This document shows positions 51,991-59,181 of a DNA stretch of 64,000 nucleotides, piece after piece; position 1 is the stretch's first letter; every line of letters begins with the position of its first letter. Source of the DNA: Octopus sinensis. Its lineage: Eukaryota. A program made the position numbers and the translations under genes. Below the pieces are notes generated by a model that worked only from the letters and a program-made list of their open reading frames with translations, had not been told where the DNA came from and made no database searches. The DNA is taken from NCBI RefSeq assembly GCF_006345805.1, contig NC_043006.1:7068001-7132000 (forward strand), written 5' to 3'.

Positions 51991-52158
51991 TATATTATAT
52001 AGAGGGCATTATTACACATAAATGCCACACGCTAGGAGGGACTTTTAAAGTCATAACTACCAAAAATAATACGACTTGTTTATTTTTGGTAGTTATGACT
52101 TTAAAAGTCCCTCCTAGCGTGTGGCATTTATGTGTAATAATGCCCTCTATATAATATA
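51991..52158. repeat. Perfect fold-back palindrome (79-bp arms, 10-nt loop)
   Basis: 51991-52069 versus 52080-52158. Confidence 0.95.
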
Positions 52159-52298
52159 TATATATATATATATATATATATATATATATATATATATATA
52201 TATATATATATATATATATATATATATATATATATATATATATACGTTTAAATATTTGTTGTGCAAGATTTTTTATGTGAAGTCGTGTGTTGAAACAG

Positions 52299-52733
52299 AT
52301 ATTGTTATATTTCGGAATGGTCATATTGCCAGTTTAGCCAATAAAAACACACGCACTATATATTTGGTGTTATTTTGCTTCAGTGATATTTAATTTTTAC
52401 ATTAATCTTAATCTTATTTCGGCCAAAGTTCTTTCGTCACACTCCTGTGACCGCATCAGTGGACCTTTGTTTTCTTCTCACTTACTTGTGTCTCTCCTTA
52501 CTAACCGTCAGCCAAAATGGCTGACGGTTAGTAAGGAGAGACACAAGTAAGTGAGAAGAAAACAAAGGTCCACTGATGCGGTCACAGGAGTGTGACGAAA
52601 GAACTTTGGCCGAAATAAGATTAAGATTAATGTAAAAAATAAATATCACTGAAGCAAAATAACACCAAATATATAGTGCGTGTGTTTTTATTGGCTAAAC
52701 TGGCAATATGACCATTCCGAAATATAACAATAT
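52299..52733. repeat. Fold-back palindrome (216-bp arms, 3-nt loop, 1 mismatch)
   Basis: 52299-52514 versus 52518-52733. The arm end also occurs alone at ~26938-26970. Confidence 0.95.
52567..52611 (+). ncRNA. Hammerhead-like motif, A9C variant (mirror copy on minus at 52421-52465)
   Basis: ggtcca-CTGATGC-g-gtcac-aggagt-gtgac-GAAA-gaac-TT-tggcc. Confidence 0.55.
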
Positions 52734-52791
52734 ATATATATATATATATATATATATATATATATATATATATATATATATATATATATAA

Positions 52792-52998
52792 CGGGAAGCT
52801 TTATGAAAATAGACAAAAGACGAAGGCAGGTGGAAAACAAACAAACAATTGTATTAGTATGGCGCTCAGGAAATATAAATAACACAAGTCTTTAACGTTT
52901 CGAGCCTACGCTCTTCAACAGAAAGATACACAGAGAGAAAAAAAACACGGAAAGAAGGAGGGAAAAAAAAAATGCGTGCAGTAACTAACGAATCAACA
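52792..52998 (-). mobile_element. Family D variant copy
   Basis: Minus strand cttt-CTGTTGA-a-gagc-gtag-gctc-GAAAC-GTT-aaag at 52890-52925. Confidence 0.8.
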
Positions 52999-53665
52999 TA
53001 TATATATATAAAGTTTATATCAATTTTTTGCTTTCTTTTTCTATTTACACCAAAGCTAAACGATTGCTTTATGCCACTGATCCAAGAACATTCTGAAAAT
53101 GTTATGGCAAGTGATTGTTACATTTAAGAGTGGTCAGTGGAACGTAATATCTGCGGTAGATTTGATGCAGTCGCCATAGTTTAGTGCGTACCTTATTGTT
53201 CCGGATCAGTTTTGGCGTAAAGAAGTTTTTATACTACGTCGCACTCCTGTTCTTCTATCTGTGGCGGAAGAATTCTGATTTGTACTGATTTCTTCCCCTG
53301 ATCGTTATCATTTTGCTGCTGTAAGCTACCGTAACAGGATAATTGATCAACCTGTCGCTGGAACATATATATATTATTGTGCTTCGTGCTAGTACTTGAA
53401 TTTCAAATATACTGTTCGCCCATATTTTATTACGCATGTCAATTGAAAACAAACTTTCGATGTGATATAATATTACTAGAATTTTAGTTTTAAAATGGGT
53501 ATGTCAACACTAAATTTGGAGTTATTTGTGATTGTCAACATTGAATGCCTCGCTAGCGAAAGTGTGTACGGAACGAATTTTACATGAATATTGTGAGTGA
53601 TAATCTGTTTGTTTTCGGTTCTCTGGAGATAGTGCTGTCTTGATGCATTATATCTTAAAGTTATT

Positions 53666-53760
53666 CTTCTATTTGTTTCAGTCATTTCACTGCGGCCATG
53701 CTGGAGCACCGCCGTTAGTCGAGCGAATCGACCCCAGGACTTATTCTACCGGCACTCTTT
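53666..53760 (-). mobile_element. SINE C right-module 3' fragment
   Basis: tttgtttcagtcatttcactgcggccatgctggagcaccgcc. Confidence 0.8.
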
Positions 53761-53773
53761 TACCAATTCAAAG

Positions 53774-55834: not shown

Positions 55835-56090
55835 ATCTGTAAATGTAGTATGTGACAATTATTCAGTAGCCATGATAAATCTCCGAGTTTCGGATGCCGG
55901 AGTGGAAATCCACGCCGCCATCTCTTCAGTTATCCGGCCATCGGATAAATTGCTATGAAAAATTTTTCATAGCATTCTGTCCGATGGCCGGATAACTGAA
56001 GAGATAGCGGCGTGGATTTCCACCCCGGCATCCGAAACTCCGTGTTTTATCATGGCTACTGAATAATTGTCACATATTACATTTACAGAT
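55835..56090. repeat. Fold-back palindrome (128-bp arms, no spacer)
   Basis: 55835-55962 versus 55963-56090, with the centre tgctatgaaaaa|tttttcatagca; roughly 10 mismatches. Confidence 0.95.
55991..56051 (+). ncRNA. Type I hammerhead-like motif with a long stem II (mirror copy on minus at 55874-55934)
   Basis: gataa-CTGAAGA-[gat(a/g)gcggcgtggatttccac(c/t)ccggcatc]c-GAAA-ctc(c/g)g(t/a)g(t/a)t-ttatc. Confidence 0.72.
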
Positions 56091-57523
56091 TCATTCCTCT
56101 ATTTAAATAATATCGAGGTTTCTTTCATTCTTTTGTCGTCTTACACTTTCTGTCAATATATACGTATATGTATATAAATGTATGTATGATGTATGAATGT
56201 ATGTATATAATTTGGGGGTAAAAAGCTTGTAGAATGTTAGGGAATGCTCGTCCGCAGTTATTGGTTACATCATCTCTTCATATAGTGCAAATGTTACCGA
56301 ATATAGATCAGAAACGTCATAGCATTTGTAGAGTTTATATGCATAAATAACTGGCAGAAAGCTGAATAACCGACGTTCTTTATTTAAAACACTACAATTG
56401 TTTTGACACATTTTTACACCTGCTGTATATTCGCGAAGTGATGTGTAATCTTTATAATAGATCCAAGGTATAAAATGCGCCTCCTGAGGTAATTGTTTAA
56501 ATAACGCCTTCGTTAGATACTCTTTTTATTTCACTTCGTGTGAAAATGCATAAACCTATAGATACATTGGCAGAAAAAATACAAATACCATCACAATACA
56601 AAGTACATTCATAAAGAAACAACTAAAAGAAAGAAATGGTTCCGTTTGACTATAATTTACCCTTCTCTCTTACTGCTCAGATTAGAAGGAAGAAAATGCA
56701 AAACAGGCTGAATAATAAAATGAAGAATAAAATTAAGCATTTAGAGATATTTGAGTGATAAAGGGATGAAGACTGACAATTTCAGTACTTATTCTTTGTC
56801 AGAAATGTTTCTTTTCCTTCTTTGAAAGATTTGAATTACTTATTCTCTCCCGTGACAAAACAACTGACCCCATTCTTGAGTTCAGTGCGCTTCTATTTAA
56901 AGTTAAAATATTACCGTCTATTTTTTAAATACTTTTTGAAAGAATTAGAAAAAATAAGTAAGTCTGTAGTTGTCCACTCCATAAATATATTCGACTACAA
57001 ACCCACCTACAAAATAGTGTATATTGTTTTGTAAACACACATACACACACACGTATACACACGCATATAAGTAAGTGTGTTTGTATATATATAAAACCTC
57101 AGTGTGTGTTTGTTTCCGGATGTTGGGAAAGTTGGGTTGTCTTAGAAAGAAAGCTCTTCTAACCAGCAGGATATTCGTCTAGATATGTTCGAGTTTACGA
57201 GGAATTAATTCTTAGTAAACGTTCAGAGCACAAACCCAAAATAATGTTCAGCAGGTTGCACAAAAGAAACAACTACAAGTCATTTTGGAAGCGTTTCACA
57301 GTAAACATGATGACAATATACAAACAGGAAACCCTGGCGACAGTACGAGGGAAATTTTGATTCCATGTCTCAATTCGAAAATGAATGCTTATAATTTCAT
57401 TTGAACACTTCTATTTTGTAAACCTATAAACCTTTTTTGTTTCCATAAAAAGGAGCAAAAATTATTTATTGCCCTATATATATATATATATATAGAGAGA
57501 GAGAGAGAGAGAGAAAGAGAGAG

Positions 57524-57827
57524 AGAGTGGTTGTATACTGTCAACTTAACGTGACGGTCCAATAGAGGGAATTAAACCACCGCTGTTTAGCCCTAGGAAG
57601 CATCGAACGCTTCCTGTCGGCTTTGACACATTTTCTGTGTCCTTATATTTGTGAAGGGGAGGCAAGCACCACTACCAGCCAAGTGCTTGCCTCCGCTTCA
57701 CAAATATAAGGACACCGAAAATGTGTCAAAGCCGACGGGAAGCGTTCGATGCTTCCAAGGGCTAAACAGCGGTGTGTAATTGCCTTTACGGGACTGTCAC
57801 GTTAAGTTGACAGTATACAACCACTCT
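57524..57827. repeat. Fold-back palindrome (~146-bp arms, 13-nt loop)
   Basis: 57524-57669 versus 57683-57827, roughly 10 differences. Confidence 0.93.
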
Positions 57828-58452
57828 ATCGCTCCACCACCGCTCATGTCTCTTTCAGACATTTAGAAATTTAATATTTCTGATATATATATATATATAT
57901 ATATATATATATATATAATATATATATATATATATATATATATATATGTATATTCCCCGGCATGGACACAGCCTTAGGGCTGGAACATATAAATGAATAT
58001 ATATATATATATATTATACAGGTATTATTATGCAAAGAGAAAAAATTCTGTTAAATATAAATAAAAATATACAGTCTTATAAATATTTAGACAGATACAT
58101 AAATATATAGATAAATGGATAGATACGTGTATGTGTTTTTGTATGTCTCTTTTCGTTATGCCTCTGGTTATCTATCTTTGAGTGTGGGCTAGAATTGCTC
58201 GAGAGGTTATAAACAAATTACCGAATTAGGGCTATGCTGTATAGTAACAAATTAGCTGGAATTTATTATTTTTTTCCAAGTTTGTGAACTAGAATGTTGG
58301 TTTAAATTAATTTCTCTTACCTTTATTGATGGTTTTCGGCATTTTTGTTAAACGTTGTATTGAGATCTGAAAAGCAAATAAGAAATTGTTAAATATTTTG
58401 CTTTGTTTTACATGCATTTATTCATATATTCATATATTCATATATATATAGT

Positions 58453-58646
58453 GCGAGTTTACGAAAAAAACAAAAGACGAAGAGAGGTGGTGTACAAAAC
58501 AAACAGATGTATTAGTATAACGCTCAGGAATAGAAAAAGTCTTTTCCGTTTCGAGCCTACGCTCTTCTACAGAAAGGGACACAGAAAAAACAAAGAGAGA
58601 AACAAGGAGAGAAAAAATGTGAGTAGTGGCTAACGATCTATCATGC
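58453..58646 (-). mobile_element. Family D copy
   Basis: Reverse complement of 46971-47161; shares the gaaacgg variant with it. Confidence 0.88.
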
Positions 58647-58960
58647 CGATATTATATATATATATATATATATACATATACATACATATATATATATATA
58701 TAATATATATTATATATATATATATATATATATATATATATAGATATATATATATATACATATACATATATATATATATATATATATATATATATATACA
58801 TATAAATATGTATATATATATATATATACATATACATATATATATATATTATATATATATATATATATATATATATATATATATTATATAATATATATAT
58901 ATATATATATATATATATATATATATATTTAAAAAAAGGAGATGTCGAACACGAGTGGTG

Positions 58961-59181
58961 ATATATAAAAAAGGAAATGAAGAAAATGCTGACAAATAAT
59001 TGAAGTAATTTAAGTAATTTAATTAGGTGAAAGTTCTTTTTACCGGTTGCGCATTTGTTATGCTTATCATTTTGATAAGCATAACAAATGCGCAACCGGT
59101 AAAAAGAACTTTCACCTAATTAAATTACTTAAATTACTTCAATTATTTGTCAGCATTTTCTTCATTTCCTTTTTTATATAT
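58961..59181. repeat. Perfect fold-back palindrome (109-bp arms, 3-nt loop)
   Basis: 58961-59069 versus 59073-59181; the ORF track gives the same peptide from both strands. Confidence 0.95.

What the first reader, a model, noticed from the sequence alone, without database searches (positions are those of the whole stretch)
51991..59181. Six unrelated long hairpin palindromes within 7.2 kb
Seen: fold-backs at 51991 (79-bp arms), 52299 (216), 53774 (~100), 55835 (128), 57524 (~146) and 58961 (109). They have different sequences, loops of 0-37 nt and arm identity from perfect to ~90%, and most abut (TA)n. Two carry hammerhead motifs, and two family D copies lie between them. Arm sequences also occur as solo copies elsewhere (family G; 26938). 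The varied divergence implies repeated events over time rather than one artefact. Inference: a local hotspot where PLE-type reverse transcription or (TA)n breakage produces inverted duplications. If transcribed, for example in an intron, it would be a dense dsRNA array for ADAR (coleoids edit RNA extensively) or endo-siRNA production.
Basis: partly seen in the sequence, partly recalled or inferred. Interest (0 to 1): 0.8.

Follow-up and report, generated by a model that had tools for sequence, protein, structure and literature searches.

The report
Fold-back repeat array in (TA)n microsatellites
Six real, mutually unrelated hairpin-forming inverted repeats sit in 7 kb because short mobile elements have repeatedly landed in (TA)n microsatellites, most as head-to-head double copies; this is an interesting variant of known microsatellite-targeted transposon arrays, not a new kind of DNA-breakage hotspot.

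Summary
All six fold-backs exist. Arms are 88-216 nt and 89-100% identical, with loops of 0-13 nt. The window holds 10 such structures; 30 simulated windows held none. The six are mutually unrelated and are tied to (TA)n tracts.

The density is high. 16.6% of 50-mers in the region have a near-perfect local inverted partner, against 3.3% in the rest of the window and a published 0.44% for Octopus bimaculoides. Clustering within the window is only moderately significant (P 0.005-0.025).

No hammerhead ribozyme is supported by covariance models. The arms are mobile-element sequence, not just local DNA. FB3 and a fold-back at 33043 belong to one dispersed family, and FB2's terminus recurs at 26939 beside another (TA)n.

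Most units share one plan: (TA)n | one-sided 33-73 nt tail + arm - loop - arm' | (TA)n. A non-palindromic 215-bp family (D, five copies) is also embedded in (TA)n.

Best reading (about 0.42): retroposon-like elements target (TA)n, and the reverse transcriptase snaps back at the template's 5' end, as in Penelope-like element insertions. Main rival (about 0.3): an animal counterpart of plant SaTar long-TIR MITE arrays. In-situ (TA)n fold-back replication (about 0.15) and assembly artefact are less likely.

The host, the copy numbers and any dsRNA/ADAR role could not be tested.

The parts
51982..52167 (.). FB1: fold-back, 88-nt arms (86/88 identical), 10-nt loop TACGACTTGT. The right arm runs directly into (TA)45; the left end is degenerate TA-rich sequence.
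52154..52244 (.). (TA)45 tract linking FB1 to the FB2 unit
52245..52298 (.). 54-nt unique 'tail' between (TA)45 and the left arm of FB2. It is either part of the insert or pre-existing DNA; this is unresolved.
52299..52733 (.). FB2: fold-back, 216-nt arms (215/216 identical), loop AAA. The right arm abuts (TA)30. The outer 32-39 nt recur at 26932-26970.
52730..52790 (.). (TA)30 tract between FB2 and family D
52782..52997 (+). Family D copy: about 215 bp, non-palindromic, with fixed ends embedded in (TA)n
53771..54014 (.). FB3: fold-back, about 116-nt arms (104/117 identical), 11-nt loop. It is a member of dispersed family F. Family homology of the left arm starts at 53757. The right arm abuts (TA)21 at 54016-54058.
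55819..55835 (+). Left copy of the 17-nt direct repeat ATATATACGTATATGTA (degenerate (TA)n) that flanks the FB4 unit
55831..56094 (.). FB4: fold-back, 132-nt arms (122/132 identical), no loop. Each arm carries a bare CUGAAGAG...CGAAAC core.
56100..56155 (.). One-sided tail of about 56-62 nt to the right of FB4, lying inside the 17-nt direct repeat
56156..56172 (+). Right copy of the 17-nt direct repeat; a candidate target-site duplication
57517..57834 (.). FB5: fold-back, about 153-nt arms (140/153; core of 92 nt at 96%), 13-nt loop. A weaker match extends to 57477/57873, so both ends reach (TA)n (57475-57494 and 57883-57947). The left outer part has become (GA)n.
58427..58652 (+). Family D copy, followed by 276 bp of degenerate (TA)n (58653-58928)
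58929..58960 (.). 32-33-nt tail between (TA)n and the left arm of FB6
58961..59181 (.). FB6: perfect fold-back, 109-nt arms (109/109 identical), loop TTT. The right arm abuts (TA)25 at 59175-59224.
32970..33394 (.). Outside the finding: a fold-back of the same plan. It has a 73-nt tail (32970-42), 168-nt arms (162/169 identical) and a 16-nt loop, with (TA)n on both sides. Tail plus arm are homologous to family F at 2885-3100, so here the tail is element sequence.
43890..44189 (.). Outside the finding: fold-back with 114-nt arms (107/114 identical), a 23-nt loop and a 49-nt tail on the right, followed by (TA)n
2890..3094 (+). Family F solo copy (long form), starting next to (TA)n 2841-2889
6457..6608 (+). 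Family F solo copy (short form) with (TA)n on both sides. Its inner end lies within about 10 nt of the position that is the centre of FB3.
26932..26970 (+). Solo terminal fragment of the FB2 arm (32 nt at 100% identity), directly abutting (TA)40 at 26864-26943 and followed by a tRNA-like SINE

Best explanation
The region is a modular array of short, non-coding mobile elements that insert into (TA)n microsatellites. Each insertion leaves (TA)n on both of its sides, which makes further targets, so unrelated elements of different ages pile up side by side without interrupting one another.

Most of these elements sit here as head-to-head (fold-back) dimers. The most likely way to make such a dimer is during target-primed reverse transcription:
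1. [quoted passage not shown] This produces the tail plus the first arm.
2. At the 5' end of the RNA the reverse transcriptase adds 0-3 nucleotides or uses microhomology, then snaps back onto its own cDNA.
3. It copies the cDNA outward, producing the second arm.
4. It rejoins the (TA)n target through TA microhomology, often before the tail has been copied.

This gives (TA)n | tail + arm - tiny loop - arm' | (TA)n. The behaviour matches what is described for Penelope-like elements: (TA)n or other microsatellite targets, extreme 5' truncation, an adjacent inverted copy and a one-sided tail.

Shown: the anatomy, the (TA)n association, family membership for 3 of the 8 fold-backs, and the asymmetric unit.

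Inferred: that an RNA intermediate exists, that snap-back is the step that makes the dimer, and what the autonomous partner is.
For: 1. Arms are mobile-element sequence.
- FB3, the 33043 fold-back and two solo copies (2890-3094, 6457-6608) form one family.
- FB2's terminus recurs 25 kb away, directly against another (TA)n.

2. In family F the monomer looks like the unit.
- The solo copy at 6457-6608 has (TA)n on both sides.
- It ends within about 10 nt of the family coordinate (about 255-258) that is the centre of both FB3 and the 33043 fold-back.
- So the centre is an element terminus.

3. The units are asymmetric.
- One-sided tails of 33-73 nt occur in FB2, FB4, FB6, 33043 and 43890.
- In 33043 the tail is demonstrably element sequence (E = 2e-18).
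- Transposase-bound terminal inverted repeats could not be this asymmetric.

4. FB4 plus its tail is enclosed by a 17-nt direct repeat. That is longer than any DNA-transposon TSD.

5. With tails included, units are bounded by (TA)n on both sides far more often than chance allows.

6. Family D is non-palindromic, has no TIR, has fixed ends and has one copy truncated at one end. It is embedded in (TA)n in all five copies. So a mechanism that targets (TA)n without using TIRs operates in this genome.

7. Loops of 0-3 nt without any pre-existing inverted repeat are what snap-back priming at a free 3' end produces. This rests on established knowledge of hairpin-primed second-strand synthesis by reverse transcriptases.

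8. [quoted passage not shown]

9. Penelope families are reported as recently active in O. vulgaris (PMC13282606).
Against: - The window has no reverse transcriptase, endonuclease or any coding remnant.
- No hammerhead is detected, and there is no pLTR-like direct tandem: tails are not copies of the arms.
- Naiads, the PLE clade with the documented (TA)n preference, are described as long dead in cephalopods.
- For FB1, FB2 and FB6, the youngest fold-backs, the 'tail' could simply be pre-existing DNA. Their symmetric perfect arms fit a long-TIR MITE equally well.
- The outer ends of family F copies vary, which is unusual for a 3' end fixed by TPRT. It needs internal priming at TA runs or later deletion.
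- The 17-nt repeat around FB4 is a degenerate-microsatellite motif that also occurs at 7811.
- Four of the six fold-backs have no other copy in the 64 kb, so their family status is unknown.
- No genome-wide or cross-species data could be obtained.
Confidence: 0.42

Rival explanations
1. This is an animal counterpart of plant SaTar/Micron/MuTAnT elements. Each fold-back would be a small non-autonomous DNA transposon (a long-TIR MITE, for example Mutator-like) that is cut and pasted into (TA)n. Such elements build non-nested arrays of unrelated modules. The adjoining (TA)n tracts may even be expanded by the insertion repair itself.
For: [quoted passage not shown]
- Here the six units are unrelated, linked by (TA)n, and none interrupts another.
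- FB1, FB2 and FB6 are symmetric and 98-100% identical.
- Mutator, Tc1-mariner and MITE families are reported as recently active in O. vulgaris.
- Slippage between the flanking (TA)n and internal TA runs could produce the recurrent 'short' outer boundaries.
Against: - In 33043 the tail is element sequence present on one arm only.
- FB4's direct repeat encloses a one-sided tail and is 17 nt long.
- No 8-11 bp or TA-only TSD sits directly against FB4, FB5 or 43890, and no terminal motif is shared between families.
- None of the four family F copies is a complete symmetric palindrome, and one is a monomer with (TA)n at the 'centre' end.
- Family D targets (TA)n without any TIR.
- SaTar arrays are so far described only in plants.
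Confidence: 0.3
2. The fold-backs arose by in-situ inverted duplication at the DNA level. (TA)n tracts form hairpins or cruciforms that stall or break replication. The nascent strand folds back, copies the neighbouring sequence in reverse, and returns to the template at a TA run.
For: - Two palindromes elsewhere in the window have (TA)n exactly at their centre (1075-1282, 61-nt arms at 98%; 43606-43741). This is the expected product of that mechanism.
- Short-arm boundaries coincide with TA runs.
- Four of the six arms have no other copy in the window.
- The mechanism would also give asymmetric units.
Against: - None of the six has (TA)n at its centre. The loops are AAA, TTT, none, or 10-13 nt of complex sequence.
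- At least three fold-backs (FB2, FB3, 33043) are made of dispersed-family sequence.
- Two of the four family F loci are fold-backs centred at the same element coordinate. That points to the element's own insertion process rather than to random local events.
- It does not explain family D.
Confidence: 0.15
3. The two perfect palindromes (FB2, FB6) are assembly or library artefacts generated near hard-to-sequence (TA)n tracts.
For: - 215/216 and 109/109 arm identity with 3-nt homopolymer loops.
- PMC8557442 notes that such structures cause assembly problems.
- No independent assembly could be found.
Against: - The same architecture occurs at 89-98% identity in six other fold-backs, with substitutions and indels that an artefact would not produce.
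- The arms are short and sit inside a contiguous context.
- FB2's terminus exists independently at 26939.
Confidence: 0.05

Closest known systems
Insertion structures of Penelope-like elements (Naiad, Neptune, Penelope/Poseidon), PMC8557442
   Same: Preference for microsatellite targets, (TA)n for Naiads. Extreme 5' truncation, so that only short 3' ends remain. An inverted truncated copy directly adjacent, forming inverted repeats. A one-sided extension of a few tens of nt. TSDs hidden by the microsatellite.
   Different: The window has no RT/GIY-YIG ORF, no pLTR direct tandem and no hammerhead. Both copies here stop at the same point, giving near-perfect hairpins with 0-16 nt loops. Tails are 33-73 nt rather than 30-40. 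Naiads are said to be long inactive in cephalopods, whereas two of these palindromes are perfect.
SaTar / Micron / MuTAnT / TAFTA: (TA)n-targeted non-autonomous Mutator-like elements of plants (PMC5907723, PMC4486113)
   Same: Small elements of about 200-450 bp that are largely inverted repeat. Flanked by (TA)n, often without a clean TSD. Linked through microsatellites into non-nested arrays of unrelated families.
   Different: Known only from plants. Here one arm often carries an extra tail, no 8-11 bp TSDs were found, no terminal motif is shared, and family F occurs as monomers. The partner element is unknown.
Foldback elements and palindromic MITEs of animals (for example the near-palindromic Harbinger repeat of Xenopus noted in PMC5625713)
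   Same: [quoted passage not shown]
   Different: Those families have fixed termini and short, defined TSDs. The (TA)n association and the one-sided tails seen here are not part of their description.
AT-rich palindrome or (TA)n cruciform-mediated rearrangement (own knowledge: PATRR-type and hairpin-capped-break models)
   Same: (TA)n is self-complementary. The two (TA)n-centred palindromes in this window (1075, 43606) look like such products.
   Different: The six fold-backs of the finding have complex, non-(TA)n centres, and at least two of them (FB2, FB3) are built from dispersed-family sequence.

Membership tests
Penelope-like element insertion | RT plus GIY-YIG endonuclease ORF, or homology to the 3' end of such an element | tested here: not met
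   No ORF of 110 aa or more with coding character, and no Pfam hit. Homology to PLE consensus sequences could not be tested because no eukaryotic repeat library was available.
Penelope-like element insertion | Pseudo-LTR: partial direct tandem of the element | tested here: not met
   Tails are not direct or inverted copies of the arms. The only marginal case is FB6 (p = 0.018), which is not significant after 12 tests.
Penelope-like element insertion | Adjacent inverted 5'-truncated copy | tested here: met
   All eight fold-backs are head-to-head copies. In family F the junction lies at a common element coordinate.
Penelope-like element insertion | One-sided extension ('tail') of a few tens of bp | tested here: inconclusive
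   One-sided segments of 33-73 nt lie between (TA)n and the palindrome in five units. The segment is proven to be element sequence only for 33043.
Penelope-like element insertion | Insertion bias for microsatellites, (TA)n in Naiads | tested here: met
   Adjacency P = 0.001 for one end and P < 5e-5 for both sides.
Penelope-like element insertion | Hammerhead ribozyme in the repeat (canonical PLEs) | tested here: not met
   No Rfam hammerhead hit at gathering score or at E <= 10, even on 200-nt slices.
SaTar-type (TA)n-targeted long-TIR MITE | Element defined by terminal inverted repeats and flanked by microsatellite | tested here: met
SaTar-type (TA)n-targeted long-TIR MITE | Non-nested linear arrays of unrelated elements joined by microsatellite | tested here: met
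   The orders FB1-(TA)45-FB2-(TA)30-D and D-(TA)n-FB6-(TA)25 are seen, and no element interrupts another.
SaTar-type (TA)n-targeted long-TIR MITE | Both inverted repeats terminal, with an 8-11 bp TSD where the flank is not microsatellite | tested here: not met
   No such TSD at FB4, FB5 or 43890. FB4's 17-nt repeat encloses a one-sided tail. In 33043 one arm lacks 73 nt of element sequence.
SaTar-type (TA)n-targeted long-TIR MITE | TIR similarity to an autonomous Mutator-like transposon | not testable with these tools
   There is no transposase in the window and no access to the host genome.
Hammerhead ribozyme / retrozyme | Three-way junction with conserved core, scored by covariance model | tested here: not met
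   The bare core is present in the FB4 arms only. The FB4 arm fold has z = -0.07.
hpRNA / ADAR-substrate locus | Transcription through the hairpin, with editing or small-RNA signal | not testable with these tools
   Only the folding potential is shown: FB2 at -384 kcal/mol, z = -57.

The most novel reading that the evidence does not exclude
A (TA)n-targeting mobilisation system in a cephalopod-like genome routinely delivers its short non-autonomous passengers as perfect head-to-head hairpins. It would work either through snap-back reverse transcription or as the first animal SaTar-type array. The system builds self-reinforcing microsatellite-linked arrays and would be a major, previously unrecognised source of the exceptionally high load of long, near-perfect dsRNA-forming loci reported for octopus.
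Probability: 0.25. Interest if true: 0.65.

Novelty: new variant of a known kind. Interest (0 to 1): 0.4.

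Why it matters
If the reading is right, the cluster is not a fragile-site curiosity. It is a small sample of a general process in which microsatellite-targeted elements create long perfect hairpins and, by leaving new (TA)n on both sides, recruit further insertions.

That would give a concrete genomic source for the unusually high density of near-perfect local inverted repeats reported for octopus, 4.4e-3 of random loci (PMC5625713). 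Such repeats are the preferred ADAR hyper-editing substrates.

It would also extend either the poorly understood PLE insertion mechanism or the plant-only SaTar phenomenon to a new setting.

Practically, such units are likely to be mis-assembled, or labelled 'unknown', 'MITE' or 'SINE', by automated repeat annotation.

Tried and rejected
- Hammerhead ribozymes: rejected after four Rfam runs, a core-pattern count and a fold of one FB4 arm.
- tRNA origin of the FB5 arm: by eye there are acceptor-like, anticodon-arm-like and T-arm-like hairpins. The tRNA model and ARAGORN find nothing. However, they also miss the window's obvious tRNA-like SINE head, so the negative is uninformative. This is kept only as a lead.
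- Clean insertion of FB3 into a SINE: the SINE 5' part (53661-53747) and 3' part (54349-54477) flank FB3, but about 110 nt of the SINE is missing, so this is not a usable empty-site test.
- Tails as pLTR-like partial copies of the arms: rejected.
- Shared terminal motifs or 8-11 bp TSDs: none found.
- Extra short terminal fragments of the other families: none found.
- Outside data, all empty:
  - exact-protein look-ups of ORFs crossing the FB1/FB2 and FB6 centres;
  - DNA scans of metagenome and prokaryote-genome collections with the FB2 terminus and the family D core;
  - protein searches with family D and SINE peptides;
  - a literature search for SINE core strings.
- As a result, the host species, genome-wide copy numbers and independent assemblies could not be obtained.
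- A first attempt at the Porath-type dsRNA statistic using whole-window HSPs underestimated the values. It was replaced by per-50-mer alignment.
- An automated classification of all (TA)n-bounded modules was too strict to be useful.

Full report
**1. Observation**

The inverted-repeat scan of 51000-60500 and of the whole window, direct reading and arm-against-arm global alignment confirm six complex fold-backs.

| Name | Arms | Identity | Loop |
|---|---|---|---|
| FB1 | 51982-52069 / 52080-52167 | 86/88 | 10 nt |
| FB2 | 52299-52514 / 52518-52733 | 215/216 | AAA |
| FB3 | 53771-53886 / 53898-54014 | 104/117 | 11 nt |
| FB4 | 55831-55962 / 55963-56094 | 122/132 | none |
| FB5 | 57517-57669 / 57683-57834 | 140/153 | 13 nt |
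| FB6 | 58961-59069 / 59073-59181 | 109/109 | TTT |

- FB5 has a weaker match that extends to 57477/57873.
- Such structures do not arise by chance. The window has 10 of at least 130 bits; 30 first-order Markov simulations had none.
- The six are mutually unrelated. There are no cross-hits by BLAST, and all pairwise local-alignment z-scores are below 2.
- As RNA, FB2 would form a hairpin with 215 of 216 positions paired, at -384 kcal/mol (z = -57).

**2. Context**

- The window is AT-rich non-coding eukaryotic DNA. It has no credible ORF, Pfam domain or tRNA gene.
- It has 71 (TA)n tracts covering 4.8% of its bases.
- Further complex-centred fold-backs of the same kind lie at 33043-33394 (162/169, loop 16) and 43890-44140 (107/114, loop 23).
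- Two palindromes, at 1075-1282 and 43606-43741, have (TA)n itself at their centre.
- The eight complex-centred fold-backs are tied to (TA)n. Five have an end within 5 nt of a tract (random mean 0.98, P = 0.001). Four have a tract within 75 nt on both sides (random mean 0.21, P < 5e-5).

**3. Is the density unusual?**

- Within the window, 6 of the 9 strongest fold-backs fall in 7.0 kb. The scan statistic gives P = 0.005 under uniform placement. It gives P = 0.025 if fold-backs are assumed to follow (TA)n, since the region holds 24% of the (TA)n bases in 11.6% of the window.
- I also reproduced the statistic of Porath et al. 2017: the fraction of 50-mers with a reverse-oriented match of more than 95% identity and at least 40 bp within ±2 kb.

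| Sequence | All 50-mers | Excluding (TA)n-rich 50-mers |
|---|---|---|
| The 7.2-kb region | 16.6% | 12.5% |
| Rest of the window | 3.3% | 1.2% |
| Published O. bimaculoides genome | 0.44% | - |

- The published value was already called exceptionally high among 19 species (PMC5625713).
- So the region is roughly 30-fold above that baseline and 5-10-fold above its own surroundings.
- Two caveats apply. The host of this window could not be verified. The published baseline comes from a short-read assembly, which probably under-represents (TA)n and palindromes.

**4. Hammerheads**

- No hammerhead family matched at Rfam gathering scores, at E <= 10 on 51500-59700, or on slices of about 200 nt of FB2 and FB4 with the laxest filters.
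- The many 'miRNA precursor' hits are generic responses of hairpin models to long hairpins.
- The bare pattern CTGANGA-N6-36-CGAAA occurs once in each FB4 arm (one independent event) and at one unrelated site, against 0.47 expected.
- A single FB4 arm folds no better than shuffled sequence (z = -0.07).
- FB2 contains CUGAUGCG-GUCACA-GGAG-UGUGAC-GAAAG, with C at the conserved A. This is read from the sequence.

**5. The arms are mobile-element sequence**

- FB3's arms match solo copies at 3004-3090 (92%) and 6480-6608 (89%).
- The longer solo copy at 2885-3100 aligns to 32976-33157, which is the 73-nt 'tail' plus the arm of the 33043 fold-back (70% over 198 nt, E = 2e-18).
- So FB3 and the 33043 fold-back are diverged members of one family, F, and that tail is simply more of the element.
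- The centres of both fold-backs map to about the same family coordinate (about 255-258).
- The solo copy 6457-6608, which has (TA)n on both sides, ends within about 10 nt of that coordinate.
- The centre is therefore an element terminus, and the monomer looks like the basic unit.
- The outer end of F carries an (ATT)n-like run next to (TA)n.
- FB2's outer 32 nt recur at 100% identity at 26939-26970, directly against a (TA)40 tract and followed by a tRNA-like SINE.
- FB1, FB4, FB5, FB6 and 43890 have no other copy in the 64 kb. This is uninformative for low- or medium-copy families in a large genome.

**6. A common plan**

Reading the flanks shows one arrangement: (TA)n | one-sided tail + arm - loop - arm' | (TA)n.

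| Unit | Tail |
|---|---|
| FB2 | 54 nt, left |
| FB4 | about 56-62 nt, right |
| FB6 | 32-33 nt, left |
| 33043 | 73 nt, left |
| 43890 | 49 nt, right |
| FB5 | none; its extended arms reach (TA)n on both sides |

- FB4 plus its tail is enclosed by an exact 17-nt direct repeat, ATATATACGTATATGTA (55819 and 56156).
- The 13-nt core of that repeat occurs three times in the window against 0.02 expected. The third occurrence lies inside another degenerate (TA)n tract.
- So the repeat is best read as a degenerate (TA)n target that was split or duplicated by the insertion.
- Tails are not copies of their arms.
- Families share no terminal motif, and no 8-11 bp TSD sits directly against the palindromes that have non-(TA)n flanks.

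**7. Other (TA)n-embedded elements**

- Family D is about 215 bp and non-palindromic, with no TIR.
- It has five copies: 52782-52997, 58427-58652, 46987-47194, 48271-48487 and 10358-10557.
- Its ends are fixed and abut (TA)n on both sides. One copy is truncated at one end.
- The region therefore reads as modules joined by microsatellite: FB1-(TA)45-[tail]FB2-(TA)30-D, and D-(TA)n-[tail]FB6-(TA)25. No module interrupts another.

**8. Literature**

- *PMC8557442*. PLE insertions are highly 5'-truncated. They often have an inverted 5'-truncated copy immediately adjacent, and they carry a 30-40 bp tail at one end. They prefer microsatellites, (TA)n for Naiads, so TSDs are often undiscernible. [quoted passage not shown] - *PMC5907723*. 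Plant SaTar elements are non-autonomous Mutator-like elements. Several are 380-425 bp with 150-180 bp TIRs. They are mostly flanked by (TA)n, often lack a TSD, and form non-nested arrays of unrelated elements. In maize TAFTA, short TA targets expand to (TA)50 after insertion.
- *PMC13282606*. Recently active families in O. vulgaris include 30 Penelope, 21 Mutator, 73 Tc1-mariner, 65 MITE and about 890 unclassified SINE families. A mosaic of many unrelated short elements is therefore normal there.

**9. Interpretation**

With fair confidence (about 0.75), the cluster is an array of mobile-element insertions into (TA)n. It is not a site where local sequence is repeatedly turned into palindromes.

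How the fold-backs are made is less certain.

*Retroposition with snap-back, PLE-like (0.42).* I favour this model for five reasons:
- the unit is asymmetric, and the tail is proven to be element sequence in 33043;
- the monomer appears to be the family F unit, with the fold-back centre at its terminus;
- FB4 has a 17-nt flanking repeat that includes the tail;
- a TIR-less family (D) uses the same targets;
- loops of 0-3 nt are what self-priming at a free cDNA 3' end gives.

The geometry is consistent. The (TA)n-side primer copies the tail plus the arm. At the RNA 5' end the enzyme folds back and copies the arm outward. The product rejoins (TA)n by TA microhomology, often before the tail has been copied. 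All steps beyond the anatomy are inferred.

*SaTar-like long-TIR MITE (0.30).* This fits the symmetric young FB1, FB2 and FB6 and the array architecture equally well. It fails on TSDs, terminal symmetry and family F's copy structure.

*In-situ (TA)n fold-back replication (0.15).* This is the natural explanation for the two (TA)n-centred palindromes elsewhere in the window. It does not explain complex centres or family membership.

*Assembly artefact (0.05).* This could concern only FB2 and FB6.

**10. What could not be done**

No DNA or protein from the same organism could be found by any route. Host identity, genome-wide copy numbers, orthologous empty sites, read support, transcription, editing and small RNAs all remain untested.

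**11. Verdict**

The structure is best filed as a new variant of known microsatellite-targeted transposable-element arrays. It works like PLE insertion or like SaTar stacking, but it meets the full membership criteria of neither.

Noticed in passing
window 1075-1282 and 43606-43741: Two palindromes have a (TA)n tract exactly at their centre: 61-nt arms at 98% identity, and about 31-nt arms at 97%. These are the ones that look like products of (TA)n hairpin-mediated in-situ inverted duplication, unlike the six of the finding.
   Followed up: partly
window 57683-57762 (FB5 right arm, + strand; mirrored in the left arm): Read outward from the palindrome centre, the arm looks tRNA-like. It has GTGCTTG...CAAGGGC (acceptor-like, 6/7 pairs), GACAC-CGAAAAT-GTGTC (5-bp stem with a 7-nt loop) and GAAGC-GTTCGAT-GCTTC (a T-arm with a B-box-like loop). 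The RNA fold has z = -2.25. The tRNA covariance model and ARAGORN give no hit, but they also miss the obvious tRNA-like SINE head at 1290-1380. If real, it would place the 5' end of a SINE at the fold-back centre.
   Followed up: partly
window 1290-1380, 26971-27100, about 9800-10100, about 38600: Several copies of a tRNA-like SINE (GGAGGCGCAATGGCCCAGTGG...GGTTTCGATTCCCAGACCGG). One begins immediately after the 32-nt FB2-family fragment at 26970. Neither ARAGORN nor Rfam detects them.
   Followed up: partly
window 60247-60594, 35022-35358; halves at 53661-53747, 54349-54477, 47204-47427, 10194-10319, 43332-43435: A second SINE of about 340 bp contains an internal (CA)n/(TA)n microsatellite. 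It often occurs as a 5' half or a 3' half broken at or near that microsatellite. Family D copies sit directly next to two such halves. This suggests that the SINE's internal microsatellite itself acts as a target.
   Followed up: partly
window 58929-58950 vs 58966-58984: The start of FB6's tail (AAAAAAGGAGATGTCGAA) resembles the outer end of the adjacent arm (AAAAAAGGAAATGAAGAA), 15 of 18 positions, p = 0.018 before multiple-test correction. It could be a trace of a partial tandem, or chance in AT-rich sequence.
   Followed up: yes
window 58424-58920 vs 47188-46727: A 497-nt stretch covering a family D copy and its degenerate (TA)n flank matches another D locus at 88% identity. Either D carries part of the microsatellite with it, or the alignment simply runs through TA repeats.
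   Followed up: no
window 12.8-24.5 kb and 33.6-43.6 kb: (TA)n tracts are strongly patchy. These two domains have one tract and none respectively. The stretches 1-12.7 kb, 24.5-33.5 kb, 43.6-48.4 kb and 52-62 kb are dense in tracts. The 1-12.7 kb domain has 26 tracts but only one fold-back.
   Followed up: no
window 21500-22500 and 41600-42200: Long low-complexity runs: ATT/ATA-type repeats that give poly-Ile/Tyr/Leu ORFs, and a TCC/TCT-rich run that gives poly-Ser/Pro/Leu ORFs with strong strand skew. They are unrelated to the fold-backs.
   Followed up: no
window 63455-63781: A weak palindromic alignment of 69.5% over 328 nt. It may be an old fold-back of the same kind.
   Followed up: no
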